The notes below the pieces were generated by a model. It was not told the origin of the DNA. It was given only the letters and a program-made list of their open reading frames with translations, and did no database searches. The position numbers and the translations under genes were made by a program. Positions 32,865 through 42,938 of a stretch of DNA of 64,000 bases are shown one piece after another (position 1 is the first letter of the stretch; each line of letters opens with the position of its first letter). The stretch lies in the IMG/VR virus record IMGVR_UViG_3300017971_000001, positions 1-64,000 of that record. One strand, 5' to 3'.

Positions 32865-34184
32865 CTAGAAGGTCTCGACGGACGTTCCGGGCAGCGGGAA
32901 CGAGCCCGAGTAGGGGTTGTAGGCCGGCGGCTGTGCGACCGAGACTCCTTGACCGGGCTGGGAGACGAAGCCGGGCGAACCGAAGATCGCCATGGGAACC
33001 TGGTAGGGCTGAGCCTGAATCGCAGTCTGCTGCGCCAGCCAGTACTGGTAGGCCTGGTTAGGATCGACGCCGTAGGGGCCGAGGGTCGGGTGGCTGTAGA
33101 AGGCCGGCAGGCTGGTGCGGCCCTGGACGAAGCTCGACTCGACCAGCGCCTTGTCAGGGGCCTTGTACTGGATACAGGTTCCCGTGTCGGCGTCGCAGAT
33201 CTTCGGGAGCGTGATCCGACGCTCAATGAAGCTGGTCGCCAGCTGGCTGTCGGGGCTGTTGTAGGTCAGGCGTCCCATGCCGAGGTCGAAGCGCTCGTTC
33301 TTGCCGGCGATCTTGCTGGCGCTCTCGCGGTACTTGGCGGGGACCTGGTCCGGGGCGAGGAACGTCCCCTGCGCGTAGTCGGGCGAGGCCTTGGGCAGCG
33401 CGCCCATGCCGAACAGCTGACGGTGACGCATGAGCGCCTTGCTGCTCATGAGCTCGCGCTTGGGCACCTGACGGGGCGAGAGGTAGGTGCCCTGGCCGTA
33501 GTCTGGACTCGCCTTGGGCAGCGCACCCATGCCGAACATTTGCCGGTGCTTGATCAGCTGGCGCGCGCTCATGCGAGTCGCGGCCGCGGCCTGCCGAGGC
33601 GAGAGGTAGGTCCCCTGCGCGTAGTCAGGACTCGCCGGCATGGCGCCCATGAACCGCTCGGGCGCGTTGTAGAGCTTCTTGTCGCTCATGCGGTACTTTT
33701 TGGGCACCTGGCGCGGCGAGAGATAGGTCCCCTGCGCGTAGTCGGGCGAGGCCTTGGGCAGCGCGCCCATGCCGAACATTTGGTGAGCGCGCATGAGCTC
33801 GCGATCGCTCATTCGCTCCCAGCCCGGCACCTGACCCGGCGAGAGGTAGGTCCCCTGTGCGTAGTCAGGCGCGCCCTTGAGCGAGAACGACTCACGCGAC
33901 TGCGCGACCTTGTTCGTCGGCACGATATCGCGAACGATCCCCGCCTCCGGGGAGAGCCAGTTGCCCTGGCCAGCCGTTCCGCCCATAGCGAGGCGCCGGC
34001 GAGACGCTCGAGCGGCAGCCCACTGGCGGCGCTCGGCGGCTCCGGGGGCAGAAGGACTCGTGTTAGGAACGCGCAGGTACATGACAACCTCCAGCTGGAG
34101 CTTTCTTTCAGTGTCGCCGGGATCTCGACCCCTGCCACCTCGAATCCTGACAACCGAAACCGACTCCTGCGTCTCGAATGGCAC
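32865..34184 (-). CDS. Repeat protein with five ~40-aa units
   Basis: PDYAQGTYLSP.QV......MS...L......FGMGALPK repeats; start codon uncertain. Confidence 0.7.
   Translation of the reverse strand: MPFETQESVSVVRIRGGRGRDPGDTERKLQLEVVMYLRVPNTSPSAPGAAERRQWAAARASRRRLAMGGTAGQGNWLSPEAGIVRDIVPTNKVAQSRESFSLKGAPDYAQGTYLSPGQVPGWERMSDRELMRAHQMFGMGALPKASPDYAQGTYLSPRQVPKKYRMSDKKLYNAPERFMGAMPASPDYAQGTYLSPRQAAAATRMSARQLIKHRQMFGMGALPKASPDYGQGTYLSPRQVPKRELMSSKALMRHRQLFGMGALPKASPDYAQGTFLAPDQVPAKYRESASKIAGKNERFDLGMGRLTYNSPDSQLATSFIERRITLPKICDADTGTCIQYKAPDKALVESSFVQGRTSLPAFYSHPTLGPYGVDPNQAYQYWLAQQTAIQAQPYQVPMAIFGSPGFVSQPGQGVSVAQPPAYNPYSGSFPLPGTSVETF
33270..33875 (-). repeat. Five imperfect ~120-bp tandem coding repeats
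   Basis: Recurring plus-strand cccatgccgaaca and gtcccctgcgcgtagtc segments; boundaries approximate. Confidence 0.85.
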
Positions 34185-34186
34185 AG

Positions 34187-34273
34187 CGCGGGGTCAACTA
34201 GTCAGGTCCATGTTCTCGGGCTCATAACCCGAGGGGGCGAAAGCCCCACGCAGGTTCGAATCCTGCCCCGCTA
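34187..34273 (+). tRNA. Initiator-type tRNA-Met(CAT) with an atypical long variable arm
   Basis: CGCGGGG/CCCCGCT+A acceptor with C1:U72 mismatch; anticodon arm TCGGG-CTCATAA-CCCGA; GGTTCGAATCC T-arm; extra GGGGC-GAAA-GCCCC arm; no encoded CCA. Confidence 0.8.
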
Positions 34274-35140
34274 TCAGACCGAGCGGAAGTAGACCGTGGC
34301 GGTCATGCCCTGACTCGCGGCGCCAGCGGTGTAGTTCACGCGCAGGCTCTGGGCCGCCGTGAACGCGACGTTATCCACGAAACCGACGTCGCCGCTCGCG
34401 AACACCCCTGAGTTGCTGAGCGTCATTTGCGTGACGCCGTTTCGCTGGATCTGAACGGTACCCGCGCCCGAGGCGAAGTTGAGCGCGATCGCAAGGATCT
34501 CGGCGTCGCGGGGGACGATATAGTCCGTCTCGACGCCCGGCGTGTTCGTTCCGATCACTGAGGCGTCGCCGTTGACGAACGCCAGCGGCTGCGTCGTGAT
34601 CGTCAATTCTCCGCCGAGGTTGGCGCAGAAGCTGTCGAGCGAGGACAGCGAAGCAATGTCCGCTGTGTTCTGGGTAATGTCTGCGCGGTTCTCGTTCAGC
34701 GCCGCGATTAGCGAGGCCGCGCCGGCGAACCCCGACAAGTTCAGATTGCTTCCGTCATTGAAGGGGAGTTGCTGACCTCGAGCTCCGAGAACCAGGTCCT
34801 GCGCGGCGCCGGCGAGAACCTGCAGAACGGCGTTCCCGCCGCCGTTCCCGATCTGGATCAGGGTCGCGGCGACGTCTGCCCACAGCTGGCGCGACGTCAG
34901 CGATCCTTCGATCCGACTGAGGAGTGCCTCGTCGAGCGTTTCGTTGAACTTGCGGGCGTCGGCGCCGTCGCCCGCGGCGAGCATGATTCGTTGCACGGTT
35001 ACCACCTGGAGAATGGTCATGACGACCGGGCCAACAAACCGATCGGGAAGAACGTTCAGCGCGCTCTGCGTCGCCGGGCCGACGTAGCGGTCGGGGAGGA
35101 CTGAGAGTCCGCGTTGGGCTGCTGGTCCGACGAAGGTCAT
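34274..35140 (-). CDS. Putative structural protein (N-terminal short repeat, coiled coil, beta-sandwich C-terminus)
   Basis: FVGPA.Q..L.VLPD repeated two to three times; beta-rich C-terminus. Confidence 0.6.
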   Translation of the reverse strand: MTFVGPAAQRGLSVLPDRYVGPATQSALNVLPDRFVGPVVMTILQVVTVQRIMLAAGDGADARKFNETLDEALLSRIEGSLTSRQLWADVAATLIQIGNGGGNAVLQVLAGAAQDLVLGARGQQLPFNDGSNLNLSGFAGAASLIAALNENRADITQNTADIASLSSLDSFCANLGGELTITTQPLAFVNGDASVIGTNTPGVETDYIVPRDAEILAIALNFASGAGTVQIQRNGVTQMTLSNSGVFASGDVGFVDNVAFTAAQSLRVNYTAGAASQGMTATVYFRSV

Positions 35141-35142
35141 GG

Positions 35143-36783
35143 TTAGGGCAGGACCCTGGGCATGAGGTTATGTTGCTCGCCCTTGAAGAGGCCGTCGTTG
35201 ATCGCCTCCCAGTTAGCGAAGACGGTCGTTGCGCCGTTGTCGAAGTCCATGGCCGTCACGTTGCCGCCGGATAGGGTGGGAGTGGCTCCCGGCCCGCTGA
35301 CTTTCCCGACCGCGCTGAGAGTGCATTTGTTTCGCGCGGGGCTGGTAGGCGACCCCCCAAAGGTTCGCGAGTAGAGCAACTCAACGTCGCGCGAAGGGGT
35401 TGAGGGAGTGCCACCCGTCTCGTCAAAGGCGAAGCCCTGGAGTTGGATTTGGGACTCACCCTCCAATGCGACGCGCCCAACCTCGTGAACGTAGAGCGCG
35501 GGAACTGCTGTAGAGCTCCCCTCGTAGATATTCTCGCCGCCGCCGTTGCTGTCAACGTGCGTGATATTGGTCAGGACTGTCTGGCCGCCGCCGACGTTGG
35601 TCATGGCCGATCCGACGCCGTTCCATTGATACCAAGTGTAGCTCCCGCCAGCGAGCAGGATCCCAATTGTTGCGACGGGGTTGGCGGGGTCGGTGTTCGT
35701 GTCGTAGTTGATCACCATGTCCACAACAATGTCCGTTGTGAACATGTCGGGGCCGGTCGGGAACGCGATTCCAGCCGGCGCGACTGTCGGGGTGATCTCG
35801 GTCGGGACGAAGGTGTTCAGGTCGACGCTGAACGCGCGCAGTCCGCGGGTGGTGTCCGACACGCCAGCAGCAAACTGCTCATAAAAGAGTATGACCATGA
35901 CCCGGGTCGCCGGGTCCTCGAAGATCACAGCCCTGCGGGAGTTGAGGCGCTCGGTCTTGGTGGCGCCTCCGGCGCTCGTTCTCCCAAACGCAGCGTCAGC
36001 CGACTGGTTGTTCACGATCCCGGGAGACAGGCCGTTCCAGCGTTCAAGCCAGCTTCCGGTGAACTCAAGCAATGAGTCGGCGGCAATGGCCGACGAGTTG
36101 TAGTCGGTGGCCACCAGGGCGAACAGGCGGCCTTGGACGACGCCGAAGATCATTCGCCCGTAGCTGGACGACGGCGTTCCATAAGCTTGGACCGAGAAAG
36201 ACAGGGCGATCGGGTCCGTTGCCAGCAGCCGGCCTCCCAGGCCGCCGTGCAGAATGTTCCGATAGAGGATCCCGGTGCTCTGGTTGGTGTTCATGAGGTT
36301 CACGCCTGGCGCGATCAGCACGGGGGTGCTTTGAATCCAGCCAGCCGGTCCGTCAAGGTCGCGGTAGATCACCCCTCCAGTGGAGGCACTGCTGCTTCTC
36401 GTCTGGGTCGCGAAGACACGAGGGACGCCGGAGGCGTTGAGGCCGACCTTCAGGTTGCAGATCGCGCGGTCCCCGACGTTGGGAGTGAATCCATTTCCGG
36501 TCGTGACCCAGTTCCCGGTGGAGGGGTCGTAGACGTAGATCGAGCCTACGCGGTTGAGCGCGGACCCCGTTCCGTCCTGGTGAACGAGGATATAGAAGTC
36601 GTTGCCGAGTCGAGCGCCGACGCCTGCGTGAGCCCCAGTCGGGAAGTTGAGGGCGTCGTTCGTCGGATCGTCCGGCGCGACGGGGATCACGTTGCCGAAG
36701 GTGGTGGGCGTTCCGTTGAGCACCCGTACCGGTTGCTGGTTCACGCCCGGGGTGTAGAGCATTCCGAGGACTTCTGCGGCCAT
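35143..36783 (-). CDS. Beta-rich putative virion protein
   Basis: 546-aa Gly/Thr/Asn-rich ORF with no catalytic motif seen. Confidence 0.6.
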   Translation of the reverse strand: MAAEVLGMLYTPGVNQQPVRVLNGTPTTFGNVIPVAPDDPTNDALNFPTGAHAGVGARLGNDFYILVHQDGTGSALNRVGSIYVYDPSTGNWVTTGNGFTPNVGDRAICNLKVGLNASGVPRVFATQTRSSSASTGGVIYRDLDGPAGWIQSTPVLIAPGVNLMNTNQSTGILYRNILHGGLGGRLLATDPIALSFSVQAYGTPSSSYGRMIFGVVQGRLFALVATDYNSSAIAADSLLEFTGSWLERWNGLSPGIVNNQSADAAFGRTSAGGATKTERLNSRRAVIFEDPATRVMVILFYEQFAAGVSDTTRGLRAFSVDLNTFVPTEITPTVAPAGIAFPTGPDMFTTDIVVDMVINYDTNTDPANPVATIGILLAGGSYTWYQWNGVGSAMTNVGGGQTVLTNITHVDSNGGGENIYEGSSTAVPALYVHEVGRVALEGESQIQLQGFAFDETGGTPSTPSRDVELLYSRTFGGSPTSPARNKCTLSAVGKVSGPGATPTLSGGNVTAMDFDNGATTVFANWEAINDGLFKGEQHNLMPRVLP

Positions 36784-41403: not shown

Positions 41404-41670
41404 GTGGACGAAGCTAAGTTGGACCTCGACGGAATGATCGACGAGGCGGTCAAGGTCGAGCCAAAGGGCGTGCTAGACGAAGCACGCCGGGACGCGCTGA
41501 AGCGGGTCGTCGATCGCCTCATGGAGCGAAAGGTCAAGCTTCCCCTGGTCAAGGTCAAGAAGATCGCTGAGGACATGCTCGGGGAGGGAGAGTGGTGCAA
41601 GCGGCGCACGTTCTACGACGTCTTCGCGAGGTTGCACCCTGAGTACCGCAAGTTCATTGGTCGCGCATGA
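41404..41670 (+). CDS. Hypothetical protein
   Basis: AAGGAAG RBS-like sequence; coupled to the next gene. Confidence 0.55.
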   Translation: MDEAKLDLDGMIDEAVKVEPKGVLDEARRDALKRVVDRLMERKVKLPLVKVKKIAEDMLGEGEWCKRRTFYDVFARLHPEYRKFIGRA

Positions 41671-42938
41671 GCGGCGACAAGGACGAACAGAGCGATCTGG
41701 ACGACCTGATCGACTCGCACAAGCCGCCCAGTCACCCCAAACGCGACAACGAGCCCCCGGGCGGCTTTCAGCCCGGCGTGACCATGAAGGGCAACACAGG
41801 GCACGCTGAGCTCGTCCTGCCGGCCGGGCAAGATCCTCGCTGGGGGGAGTTCCTGGAGGAGTTCGGCTACGGTAACGTTCTCGAGCTCGTCGAGGTCGTC
41901 GAGGTGCGCGCCTGGCAGACCTTCTCCAAAGACCACGGCAAGCAGAACCTACGCTATATCAAGGCGCGGGTCGTCAAGCGACGAGACGCGGCCGACGTCG
42001 AGGACCTGGAGCGCCTCAAGGACTGGATCATGAAGGACGAGCCGCCGCAGGAGCCGCTCGCCCCTTTCATTTCCGGCAACGAGAAGACGCTGCTCGTGTT
42101 CTTGTCCGACTGGCAGTTGGGTAAGCGTGAGGGCGGCGGCAGCCGGGCAACCGTCGAGCGGATCAATCAGGCGATCGAGCACCTGATCGAATACGTCTCT
42201 GTGCTGCGCAACAACGGGCACGTGATCAACGAAGTCGTCCTGTGCGGCATGGGCGACATGGTGGAATCGTGCAGCGGTTTCTATCCCATGCAGGAATTCC
42301 AAGTCGATCTCCACATGCGCCAGCAGCGCATGGTGGTCCGCCGCCTCCTGATCCGGATCGCCAAAAAGCTCCGTCCTCACTTCGCCAAGATCACCTTCCG
42401 GGCTGTTCCCGGAAACCATGGTGAAGTGCGCAAGGGAGGGGCTGGATCCAAGGCATTTACGTCGTTCAGTGATAACAACGACGTTTGCATTTTCGATCAG
42501 TTGCGCGACGTAGTCGCCGAGGCGCGCTGGGGCGAGGGGATCGACGTCCATACGACTCAGGTCGGCAAGCCCGAGCTCACCATGAGCTTCAAGATCGAGA
42601 ACGGCGAAGGGGCCAGCGTTGCTGTCGGGCTTGCCCACGGCCACCAGGCCGGCAGTCACAGCCGGGGCGACCCGGCGGACAAGATCAAGAAGTGGTGGAC
42701 CGACTGCTCCGGATCCCGCCACCCGATTGGCTACGTGGACATGCTCTGCACTGGGCACTACCACCACCTTCGCGTTGAGGACCGTGGCGAGCGGCGGACC
42801 TGGTTCCAATGTCCGACTCTCGACGGCGGATCCTTCTGGTACTGGGCTCGCGGCGGTCGCGGCTCTGTTCCCGGCATGCTTGTTGTTCTGGCAGACCCTG
42901 CGCACCCGCGGGGCTGGTGTGAGGTCAAGGTCCTATGA
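41667..42938 (+). CDS. Calcineurin-like metallophosphoesterase (phage type)
   Basis: SDWQLG, GD, GNH, HGH and GHYH motifs. Confidence 0.88.
   Translation: MSGDKDEQSDLDDLIDSHKPPSHPKRDNEPPGGFQPGVTMKGNTGHAELVLPAGQDPRWGEFLEEFGYGNVLELVEVVEVRAWQTFSKDHGKQNLRYIKARVVKRRDAADVEDLERLKDWIMKDEPPQEPLAPFISGNEKTLLVFLSDWQLGKREGGGSRATVERINQAIEHLIEYVSVLRNNGHVINEVVLCGMGDMVESCSGFYPMQEFQVDLHMRQQRMVVRRLLIRIAKKLRPHFAKITFRAVPGNHGEVRKGGAGSKAFTSFSDNNDVCIFDQLRDVVAEARWGEGIDVHTTQVGKPELTMSFKIENGEGASVAVGLAHGHQAGSHSRGDPADKIKKWWTDCSGSRHPIGYVDMLCTGHYHHLRVEDRGERRTWFQCPTLDGGSFWYWARGGRGSVPGMLVVLADPAHPRGWCEVKVL

What the first reader, a model, noticed from the sequence alone, without database searches (positions are those of the whole stretch)
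34187..34273. Initiator tRNA-Met with an inserted class-II-like variable arm, antisense and exactly filling a gene gap
Seen: C1:U72 mismatch, G2-C71, C3-G70, A73, A11-U24, three consecutive G-C pairs in the anticodon stem and a CAU loop. Established: these are bacterial initiator/formylation determinants, and initiator tRNAs normally have a short variable loop. Unusual features: a 5-bp GGGGC/GCCCC arm with a GAAA tetraloop (34234-34247); the acceptor and T stems compete for C34266, so the combined helix is one pair short; no encoded CCA. It occupies nearly the whole interval between two minus-strand genes (34185-34273). Inference: a modified initiator that may favour viral (leaderless) initiation or resist host tRNAfMet nucleases, or else a decoy or decaying tRNA.
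Basis: partly seen in the sequence, partly recalled or inferred. Interest (0 to 1): 0.65.

Follow-up and report, generated by a model that had tools for sequence, protein, structure and literature searches.

The report
Phage initiator tRNA with extra arm
A giant phage carries a start-codon (initiator-type) tRNA gene with an added stem-loop that normally only a few other tRNA types have; it belongs to a recurrent, apparently phage-only and undescribed group, though this copy lacks one base pair and may not work fully.

Summary
ARAGORN calls tRNA-Met(CAT); Rfam's tRNA model scores 29.7 bits against a cut-off of 29. The window is the start of a 245-kb jumbo-phage genome.

The extra arm is not a one-off. 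About 80 distinct initiator-type CAU tRNAs with a variable-arm hairpin occur in viral and metagenome contigs, mostly inside phage tRNA arrays. I found no convincing chromosomal example among about 186,000 cellular species.

On 27 members, all five pairs of the extra arm change on both sides and 94% of cells stay paired. The one true homologue (L111, 87.5% identical) differs at 11 positions. Ten are in stems and all ten keep pairing.

Similar hairpins occur in other isotypes of phage tRNAs, including cultured phages, so the arm is a general phage-tRNA trait.

This copy is atypical. It is solitary, antisense to its neighbours, and the only member whose acceptor/T stack is one pair short. That shortfall is in the DNA of independent assemblies.

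"Exactly filling the gap" is not right: the true gap is about 191 nt. The missing CCA is normal for this phage. Expression and the arm's function remain untested.

The parts
34187..34273 (+). Initiator-type tRNA(CAU) gene with extra variable arm, 87 nt, no encoded CCA
   Evidence: ARAGORN tRNA-Met(cat). Rfam RF00005 at 29.7 bits. Own covariance model R1 at 106 bits. Homologue L111 is 87.5% identical over 88 nt.
34187..34193 (+). Acceptor stem 5' strand CGCGGGG. C1 is unpaired against U72, and G7 has no free partner.
   Evidence: Sequence. The cmscan alignment shows a deletion opposite G7. The MFE fold pairs only G2-G6.
34196..34214 (+). D arm: stem AACU/UGUU (A11-U24; U13 opposite U22) with an 11-nt loop containing GG
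   Evidence: Sequence. The same unusual stem is found in the homologue L111, so it is a lineage trait and not decay.
34216..34232 (+). Anticodon arm UCGGG-CUCAUAA-CCCGA with three consecutive G-C pairs. The anticodon CAT is at 34223-34225.
34234..34247 (+). Extra (variable) arm: GGGGC stem, GAAA tetraloop, GCCCC stem. It is flanked by G34233 and by AC at 34248-34249.
   Evidence: Covariation: against L111, two pairs changed on both sides and one on one side. On 27 class members, 5 of 5 pairs changed on both sides and 94% of cells are paired.
34250..34266 (+). T arm GCAGG-UUCGAAU-CCUGC
34267..34273 (+). Acceptor 3' strand CCCGCU (six bases, one C short) plus discriminator A73
   Evidence: The C-run is verified in independent assemblies. 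All other class members have seven bases here.
34083..34186 (.). 104-nt non-coding spacer between the tRNA 5' end and the probable true start of the divergent gene. It is the only place for a tRNA promoter, but none was recognised.
   Evidence: GC3 and Shine-Dalgarno analysis. No sigma-70-like site. No RNA family match. No repeated motif.
32865..34082 (-). Divergent neighbour gene (revised start ATG 34082). Its protein has five repeats of about 41 aa and no known family.
34274..35140 (-). Convergent neighbour gene whose stop codon (34274-34276) abuts the tRNA 3' end. No known family.

Best explanation
This is a genuine phage-borne initiator-type tRNA(CAU) gene. It belongs to a phage-restricted lineage of tRNAs in which a short hairpin, usually closed by a GNRA tetraloop, has been added to the variable region and is kept by selection.

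Shown:
- All bacterial initiator hallmarks are present.
- The extra arm covaries like a real helix.
- The normal home of such genes is a co-oriented phage tRNA array.
- The class is practically absent from cellular chromosomes.
- The same kind of arm occurs in other isotypes of phage tRNAs.

Inferred:
- The transcript, made from an unrecognised promoter in the 104-nt spacer, is matured by host RNase P, 3' trimming and the host CCA-adding enzyme.
- It is charged by host MetRS, which reads the anticodon and, as a class I enzyme, should leave the variable side of the tRNA facing solvent.
- It is formylated and delivered to the ribosomal P site. A long arm poses less of a problem there than for an elongator, because the initiator skips the A site.
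- The arm most likely makes phage tRNAs structurally distinct or robust. It could act as a steric shield or mark against host factors that attack or inactivate tRNA, or as a fold stabiliser for rapidly made, under-modified tRNA.

This copy has lost one C at the acceptor/T junction, so its stack is 11 rather than 12 pairs. It is probably a weakened but recently functional member. I cannot decide whether it still works.
For: Identity:
- C1xU72, G2-C71, C3-G70, A73, A11-U24, three G-C pairs and a CAU loop.

Class:
- 69 viral contigs and 40 metagenome contigs match an initiator anticodon arm, an over-long gap and a T arm. About 80 distinct sequences remain after cleaning.
- 1:72 is mismatched in about 80% of members and A73 is present in 79%.

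Extra-arm helix:
- 5 of 5 pairs change on both sides and 94% of cells are paired.
- For the whole structure the covariation score is 0.603, against 0.172 in shuffles (0 of 500 reach it) and at most 0.10 in slid registers.

Homologue L111:
- It differs by 11 substitutions. Ten are in stems and all are pair-preserving, including four double compensatory changes. The anticodon, T and tetraloop sequences are identical.
- In L111 the gene lies 4 nt after a normal tRNA-Met and 6 nt before tRNA-Ala, in an array of 25 tRNAs plus a tmRNA.

Context and distribution:
- 85 of 114 long-arm CAU tRNAs have a same-strand tRNA neighbour within 300 nt.
- Cellular hits are artefacts, archaeal intron-like cases or array-borne.
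- Arms occur in other isotypes and in cultured phages. They are more frequent in phages that also have the long-arm initiator: 8.8% against 3.7%.

Literature:
- A long arm must avoid the A-site finger during translocation (PMC11231383).
- Phages cannot escape tRNA-fMet nucleases by changing the anticodon loop (PMC10264068).
Against: - No RNA data exist for this region, so transcription, processing and charging are unshown.
- No promoter or terminator was recognised.
- This copy is the only class member with a one-base shortfall in the acceptor strand. It has the lowest Rfam score: 29.7 bits, against 37.5 for L111 and 41-53 for others.
- It is solitary and antisense to an operon, unlike most members.
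- The phage has no formyltransferase, deformylase or CCA-adding enzyme of its own.
- The protective role of the arm is pure inference. Because the arm also occurs in other isotypes, a neutral or purely structural origin is possible.
- The pattern search fixed the anticodon arm and T loop, so those features are invariant by ascertainment.
Confidence: 0.6

Rival explanations
1. The class is real but this copy is a recently disabled relic. It was stranded outside any tRNA array, and a one-base deletion shortened the acceptor/T stack, so it is no longer matured or charged efficiently.
For: - It is the only member one base short.
- The deletion lies in a slippage-prone C-run and is real DNA.
- It has the lowest Rfam score of the class.
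- It is solitary and antisense, with no recognisable promoter or terminator.
Against: - Every other helix and all loops are intact.
- The 11 differences from L111 are almost all pair-preserving, so selection acted until very recently.
- No polymorphism appears across four runs from three studies.
- Other members tolerate a one-base insertion at the same junction (L118, L128, L146).
- L124 tolerates two mismatches at the top of the stem.
Confidence: 0.3
2. It acts outside translation, as a decoy or sponge. The initiator-like body attracts a host factor that attacks or inactivates tRNA-fMet (a VapC-type nuclease or an acetyltransferase toxin), while the arm and the short stack keep it out of normal use.
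For: - The initiator determinants are kept while the stack length deviates.
- Host toxins that target tRNA-fMet are known (PMC10264068).
Against: - Most class members have a canonical 7/5 stack and many encode CCA (31 of 82). They sit in arrays that otherwise form near-complete tRNA sets, in which they are the only initiator. That argues for ordinary use in translation.
- No direct evidence exists.
Confidence: 0.07
3. The functional strand is the minus strand. The reverse complement forms a structured element in the polycistronic mRNA between the two genes, acting as a processing or stability signal.
For: The reverse complement folds strongly (-41.1 kcal/mol, z -4.15) and lies between two co-oriented genes.
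Against: - Any complement of a structured RNA folds well.
- The conserved features are those of the + strand: T loop, anticodon loop, GG in the D loop, and the initiator hallmarks.
- In L111 and 85 of 114 other cases the gene is co-oriented with tRNAs, not embedded in mRNAs.
Confidence: 0.02
4. It is not an initiator but an elongator tRNA-Met, or a tRNA-Ile2 whose C34 is converted to lysidine.
For: The CAU anticodon is shared by all three kinds. CcrColossus has a long-arm CAU tRNA of elongator type.
Against: - The 1:72 mismatch, A11-U24, the three G-C pairs, and A73 with G2-C71 and C3-G70 are all initiator features.
- By my own recollection, the acceptor pairs 4:69 and 5:68 are G-C here, not the C-G pairs reported as TilS determinants in E. 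coli.
Confidence: 0.02

Closest known systems
Bacterial initiator tRNA (tRNA-fMet)
   Same: - The first seven bases (CGCGGGG U) and the anticodon arm (UCGGG CUCAUAA CCCGA) match my recollection of E. coli tRNA-fMet.
- Also shared: the 1:72 mismatch, G2-C71, C3-G70, A73, A11-U24, the three G-C pairs and the CAU anticodon.
   Different: - The variable region is 17 nt with a 5-bp stem and a GAAA loop, instead of 5 nt.
- The acceptor/T stack is 11 pairs, not 12.
- The D stem is AACU/UGUU with a U-U mismatch.
- The 1:72 mismatch is C-U, not C-A.
- It is phage-borne.
Class II tRNAs (bacterial Leu, Ser, Tyr, Sec)
   Same: A base-paired variable arm emerges between the anticodon and T arms, with one unpaired base before it and two or three after. 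Rfam's tRNA-Sec model aligns the arm (36.4 bits, below its cut-off of 47).
   Different: - The anticodon and identity set are those of the initiator, not Leu, Ser, Tyr or Sec.
- The arm is usually closed by a GNRA tetraloop (27 of 73 hairpins).
- In Ser and Sec tRNAs the arm is a synthetase identity element. Here no such role is known.
Long-arm tRNAs of class I isotypes in cultured jumbo phages: Caulobacter phage CcrColossus tRNA-Met and tRNA-Cys, Xanthomonas phage X1 tRNA-Lys and tRNA-Asn, phiCbK-like tRNA-Lys
   Same: - They have the same kind of inserted hairpin, for example GGGC-GAAA-GUCC and GGC-GAAA-GCC.
- The CcrColossus tRNA-Met is also antisense to its flanking genes.
   Different: - They are of elongator type. 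CcrColossus Met has G1-C72 and no three G-C pairs.
- They are annotated simply as tRNA, with no comment on the arm.
- No cultured phage with the initiator-type version was found.
Non-canonical tRNAs from metagenomes and phages (allo-tRNAs with 8/4 or 9/3 stacks; Mukai et al. 2017, PMC5389517) and nematode nev-tRNAs (PMC3333845)
   Same: They are precedents for tRNAs that combine a long variable arm with an unexpected anticodon or altered stem lengths, some of them in phages.
   Different: - Those derive from Ser, Sec or Leu tRNAs and keep a 12- or 13-pair stack.
- This one derives from the initiator and has 11 pairs in this copy, 12 in its relatives.
Phage tRNAs proposed to evade host anticodon nucleases (van den Berg et al. 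2023, PMC10264068)
   Same: Both involve a phage-encoded tRNA that differs from the host's in a way that could block a host tRNA-directed defence.
   Different: - That model relies on anticodon-loop substitutions, and it notes that phages mostly avoid encoding tRNA-fMet.
- Here the loop is unchanged and the difference is an added arm. Evasion is untested.

Membership tests
Bacterial initiator tRNA | No Watson-Crick pair at 1:72 | tested here: met
   C34187 lies opposite U34272. 1:72 is unpaired in 21 of 27 aligned class members.
Bacterial initiator tRNA | Three consecutive G-C pairs at 29:41, 30:40 and 31:39 | tested here: met
   GGG at 34218-34220 pairs with CCC at 34228-34230. In the class this feature is invariant by ascertainment.
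Bacterial initiator tRNA | A11:U24 in the D stem (elongators have pyrimidine 11:purine 24) | tested here: met
   A34197 pairs with U34213. A-U is present in 24 of 27 members.
Bacterial initiator tRNA | Formylation determinants G2:C71, C3:G70 and A73 | tested here: met
   Sequence. They are positional only. If RNase P measures 12 pairs and cuts one base earlier (ARAGORN's model), they shift by one position.
Bacterial initiator tRNA | Short (5-nt) variable loop | tested here: not met
   The variable region is 17 nt with a 5-bp hairpin.
Bacterial initiator tRNA | Aminoacylation with Met, formylation, and IF2- and P-site-dependent use | not testable with these tools
   No RNA run holds the region. 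Biochemistry is needed.
Canonical cytoplasmic tRNA | 12-pair acceptor/T coaxial stack (7 + 5) | tested here: not met
   The 3' acceptor strand has six bases, and this is verified in independent assemblies. L111 and all other members have seven.
Canonical cytoplasmic tRNA | Cloverleaf with a conserved T loop and G18G19 in the D loop, recognised by tRNA models | tested here: met
   ARAGORN. RF00005 scores 29.7 bits, only just over the gathering score of 29.
Class II tRNA | Variable region of more than 10 nt that forms a stem-loop | tested here: met
   34233-34249 with a 5-bp stem. Covariation supports the stem.
Class II tRNA | Leu, Ser, Tyr or Sec identity | tested here: not met
   The anticodon is CAU and the identity set is that of the initiator.
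Phage long-variable-arm initiator-type tRNAs (class defined here) | Initiator-type anticodon arm plus a variable-arm hairpin, on phage DNA | tested here: met
   The window copy scores 106 bits with model R1, though it was one of that model's three seed sequences.
Phage long-variable-arm initiator-type tRNAs (class defined here) | Located in a co-oriented tRNA array | tested here: not met
   The nearest other tRNA in this phage is 86 kb away. By contrast, 85 of 114 members have a same-strand tRNA neighbour within 300 nt.

The most novel reading that the evidence does not exclude
Phages have repeatedly equipped their own tRNAs with an added variable-arm hairpin, most strikingly the otherwise near-invariant initiator. 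The hairpin serves as a phage-specific structural mark. It could let the phage tRNA escape host factors that cleave, modify or sequester tRNA-fMet and other tRNAs. It could also let a phage factor tell phage tRNAs from host ones. Either way this would be an escape route outside the anticodon loop, which the initiator cannot afford to mutate.
Probability: 0.3. Interest if true: 0.8.

Novelty: new variant of a known kind. Interest (0 to 1): 0.62.

Why it matters
Initiator tRNA is among the most conserved RNAs in bacteria. In textbook accounts, a long variable arm is confined to Leu, Ser, Tyr and Sec tRNAs.

This finding would matter for three reasons:
- **tRNA biology.** A phage-restricted, covarying extra arm on initiator-type tRNAs, and on other class I isotypes in the same phages, would be a new structural class of natural tRNAs.
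- **The phage tRNA question.** It offers a concrete handle on why phages carry tRNAs. The arm can be deleted or transplanted, then tested against tRNA-directed host toxins and defence nucleases.
- **Engineering and annotation.** Such tRNAs could serve as naturally orthogonal initiator scaffolds. Annotation pipelines score them weakly or mislabel them: 29.7 bits here, and one X1 example is labelled tRNA-OTHER.

For this particular window, the practical message is that the gene is real in origin but may be a crippled copy.

Tried and rejected
- **Syntenic relatives through the neighbouring protein.** The search found none. L111 shares only the tRNA with this phage and no proteins.
- **D-arm pattern for this exact lineage in IMG/VR.** It found nothing.
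- **Decayed second tRNA or other RNA family in the 104-nt spacer.** None was found. The TCGAATCCTG repeat at 34140 is a chance 10-mer.
- **Promoter, terminator or repeated-motif search.** This was uninformative.
- **Assembly error in the C-run.** Rejected.
- **RNA evidence.** No RNA run holds the stretch.
- **Cellular hits.** Eight carry NN gaps with duplicated GAAGGTC and are scaffolding artefacts. About eleven are archaeal and probably carry introns. Several are tandem-duplication artefacts or not tRNAs.
- **Brevundimonas phage match.** It is a true tRNA-Ser(CGA), not an initiator.
- **Phage-encoded CCA-adding enzyme, deformylase or formyltransferase.** None was found.
- **Pfam and PHROG scans of 14 neighbouring proteins.** They gave only an exonuclease at 41667-42938 and families of unknown function.
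- **MAFFT alignment of the class (A1).** It misplaced the arm strands, so I used a covariance-model alignment instead. That alignment leans towards the modelled structure.
- **attP remnant.** Rejected, because the whole tRNA is present and the phage has terminal repeats.
- **Archaeal-type intron.** Rejected, because there is no bulge-helix-bulge motif.

Full report
**What is there**

The window is the first 64 kb of a 245,276-bp IMG/VR phage record with direct terminal repeats and 63% G+C. Its source contig also turned up in the metagenome scan as L145.

ARAGORN finds one tRNA in the window, tRNA-Met(cat) at 34186-34275. Rfam's tRNA model places it at 34187-34273 with 29.7 bits, just over the gathering score of 29. 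Read directly, the gene is:
- acceptor CGCGGGG (34187-34193), then U8 and C9
- D arm AACU-AGUCAGGUCCA-UGUU
- C26
- anticodon arm UCGGG-CUCAUAA-CCCGA (anticodon 34223-34225)
- G44
- extra arm GGGGC-GAAA-GCCCC (34234-34247)
- AC
- T arm GCAGG-UUCGAAU-CCUGC
- acceptor 3' strand CCCGCU
- A73 (34273)

The 3' acceptor strand has six bases, not seven, so G7 and G49 compete for C34266. ARAGORN can only build seven 'pairs' by starting one base earlier and accepting two mismatches at the top. The minimum-energy fold pairs G2-G6 only.

**Is the shortfall real?**

Yes. Logan contigs of two runs from different studies span 33749-35200 with no difference and no gap, at depth about 9 and about 28. Two further low-depth runs show the same letters from 34264 on. 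At most one of these samples can be the source of the assembly. No RNA run holds the region, so expression could not be tested.

**The gene gap**

The minus-strand gene at 34274-35140 does end right against the tRNA; its stop codon is at 34274-34276. The other neighbour is different. The GTG at 34184 is only the first possible start after a stop.
- The first 34 codons have third-position GC of 0.62, against 0.76-0.96 further in.
- ATG 34082 has GGAGG five bases upstream.

The non-coding interval is therefore about 191 nt, and the tRNA occupies its right-hand 87 nt. The remaining 104 nt hold no RNA-family match, no sigma-70-type promoter and no motif repeated elsewhere in the genome.

The tRNA is antisense to a long run of minus-strand genes of unknown function.

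**Not a one-off**

I searched for an initiator anticodon arm, an over-long gap (16-34 nt, where 10 is normal) and a T arm.
- The pattern matched 69 IMG/VR contigs.
- A narrower version matched 40 metagenome contigs.
- ARAGORN calls nearly all of them tRNA-Met with a long variable arm.
- After removing duplicates and artefacts, 82 distinct sequences remain, counting the window's copy.

Within this set:
- Almost all have a seven-position acceptor stem with only 1:72 unpaired, plus a five-pair T stem.
- 1:72 is mismatched in about 80% and A73 is present in 79%.
- CCA is encoded in 31 of 82.
- The variable region forms hairpins of 5 pairs or more in 18% of members, against 6% of shuffles.
- 27 of 73 hairpins are closed by GNRA tetraloops.

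**Distribution**

The same pattern matched only 39 places in one genome each of about 186,000 cellular species. Those break down as follows:
- About eleven are archaeal, with insertions that look like introns.
- Eight contain NN gaps flanked by duplicated GAAGGTC. These are scaffolding artefacts.
- Several are tandem-duplication artefacts or not tRNAs.
- The remaining nine or so lie on short MAG contigs or inside dense co-oriented tRNA arrays of 7-17 genes, which is the typical phage arrangement.

I found no convincing chromosomal example.

**Covariation**

A covariance model seeded from the three sequences with the window's exact geometry was used to align 27 class members. On that alignment:
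- The extra arm has 5 of 5 pairs with changes on both sides and 94% of cells paired. This is as good as the canonical stems.
- For the whole structure, 94.4% of cells pair, against 71.8% in shuffles.
- The covariation score is 0.603, against 0.172 in shuffles (0 of 500 shuffles reach it). Sliding the partner by 1-3 columns gives at most 0.10.

There are two caveats. The alignment was fitted to the model, and the pattern fixed the GGG/CCC pairs and the T loop.

**The one true homologue**

L111 is a 19-kb metagenome contig with 55% G+C. It carries a tRNA 87.5% identical over 88 nt, with the same odd D stem (AACU/UGUU) and a full seven-base acceptor 3' strand.

The two copies differ by 11 substitutions and one indel. 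Ten substitutions are in stems and every one keeps pairing:
- 6:67 changes from A-U to G-C.
- 28:42 changes from A-U to C-G.
- 27:43 changes from U-G to U-A.
- Arm pair 2 changes from C-G to G-C.
- Arm pair 4 changes from A-U to G-C.
- Arm pair 5 changes from U-G to C-G.

Only one substitution is in a loop. The anticodon loop, T loop and GAAA loop are identical. This is the signature of an RNA under structural selection in both lineages.

L111 shares no protein with this phage. There the gene lies in an array of 25 same-strand tRNAs plus a tmRNA, 4 nt after a normal-length elongator-type tRNA-Met and 6 nt before tRNA-Ala. Across all loci, 85 of 114 long-arm CAU tRNAs have a tRNA neighbour within 300 nt, always on the same strand.

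**The arm is not specific to initiators**

BLAST against GenBank phages found hits that cover the arm region in cultured jumbo phages:
- Caulobacter phage CcrColossus has an elongator-type tRNA-Met with GGGC-GAAA-GUCC, also antisense to its flanking genes, and a tRNA-Cys with GGC-GAAA-GCC.
- Xanthomonas phage X1 has a tRNA-Lys(CUU) with GGC-GAAA-GCC and a long tRNA-Asn.
- phiCbK-like phages have a tRNA-Lys match over the same region.

In the fetched loci, about 9% of tRNAs of class I isotypes other than Met are 80 nt or longer. Most have a small hairpin, often GAAA-closed, in the variable region.

Such tRNAs are more frequent in loci with a long-arm initiator (60 of 684) than in loci with a normal initiator (11 of 301). 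Fisher's test gives p = 0.003, though the loci are not independent. This suggests a genome-level tendency.

No cultured phage with the initiator-type version was found.

**How it most likely works**

Shown: the gene has initiator identity. The arm is a selected helix. The family's natural setting is the phage tRNA set, where it is the only initiator.

Inferred:
- Maturation and charging use host enzymes, because the phage has no CCA-adding enzyme, formyltransferase or deformylase and none of its five tRNAs encodes CCA.
- From established knowledge, MetRS reads mainly the anticodon and, as a class I enzyme, approaches the side of the tRNA away from the variable region.
- A long arm has to move out of the way of the A-site finger during translocation (PMC11231383). 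The initiator skips that step.

The function of the arm is open. My preferred reading is a structural mark or shield that makes phage tRNAs poor substrates for host tRNA-directed toxins or defence nucleases. That is attractive for the initiator, whose anticodon loop cannot be altered to escape. The published evasion model notes that phages mostly avoid encoding tRNA-fMet for this reason (PMC10264068). A role as a fold stabiliser for fast-made, under-modified tRNA is equally compatible with the data.

**This particular copy**

It is atypical in four ways: it is solitary, it is antisense, it has no recognisable signals, and it is the only member one pair short.

Its Rfam score of 29.7 bits compares with 37.5 for L111 and 41-53 for other members. 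The arm and the odd D stem already cost this lineage points, and the deletion costs about 8 bits more.

Some observations argue against simple decay:
- Every other element is intact.
- No polymorphism was seen across samples.
- Three members tolerate an extra base at the same junction (L118, L128, L146).
- L124 tolerates two mismatches at the top of the stem.

I put about 0.3 on 'recently disabled relic' and somewhat more on 'weakened but used'.

**Literature and novelty**

Five full-text searches and three papers read turned up no description of initiator tRNAs with a long variable arm, or of class I phage tRNAs with inserted hairpins. A 2020 review of non-canonical tRNAs mentions neither phages nor initiators.

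The nearest precedents are allo-tRNAs (PMC5389517) and nematode nev-tRNAs (PMC3333845). The library lacks most subscription journals, so this absence is not proof of novelty.

I rate the finding a new variant of a known kind.

Noticed in passing
G000 (same phage, outside the window) 128149-128557, minus strand: The phage encodes a tmRNA (tag peptide ADQKAHLPTATSRA) next to tRNA-Gly(tcc). It also has tRNA-Thr(tgt), tRNA-Glu(ttc) and tRNA-Leu(aag) at 120-186 kb. None of them encodes CCA.
   Followed up: partly
L111 13712-14128, 4167-4299 and 3570-3705 (minus strand): The contig with the true homologue carries 25 tRNAs and a tmRNA (135.6 bits). It also has two Y-RNA-like (YrlA) matches inside the array that fall below the cut-off: 58.5 and 40.3 bits against 69.
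   Followed up: no
L119 1752-2158 (+): A full-length GOLLD RNA (265 bits) lies about 600 nt downstream of a long-arm initiator-type tRNA on a metagenome contig.
   Followed up: no
window 32865-34082 (minus strand): The neighbouring protein contains five tandem repeats of about 41 aa beginning SPDYAQGTYLSPRQVP. It has no Pfam or PHROG match.
   Followed up: no
window 34089-34100; also 27143, 52410 and G000 108621: A 12-nt palindrome, CTCCAGCTGGAG, overlaps the Shine-Dalgarno of the neighbouring gene and recurs elsewhere in the genome.
   Followed up: no
L149 (CcrColossus JX100810, 132216-132302 and 133537-133623); L150 (Xanthomonas phage X1 OQ427096, 139513-139595 and 140237-140318): Cultured jumbo phages have tRNA-Cys, tRNA-Met, tRNA-Asn and tRNA-Lys with inserted variable-arm hairpins, several with GAAA loops. 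They are annotated as plain tRNAs. X1 also has a 'tRNA-OTHER' at 140850-140923.
   Followed up: partly
L070, L074, L083, L085, L089, L091, L094, L108 (cellular genome contigs): The initiator tRNA genes of several MAGs carry an NN gap flanked by a duplicated GAAGGTC in the variable loop. This recurring scaffolding artefact mimics a long arm.
   Followed up: yes
L118, L128, L146 (metagenome contigs): Three long-arm initiator-type tRNAs have one extra base between the T stem and the acceptor 3' strand. This is the opposite of the window's missing base.
   Followed up: partly
L090 1877-1952 (Lachnospiraceae MAG contig): A tRNA with anticodon CTA (an amber suppressor, called tRNA-Pyl by ARAGORN) lies about 200 nt from a long-arm initiator-type tRNA. 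This hints at a stop-codon-recoding phage.
   Followed up: no
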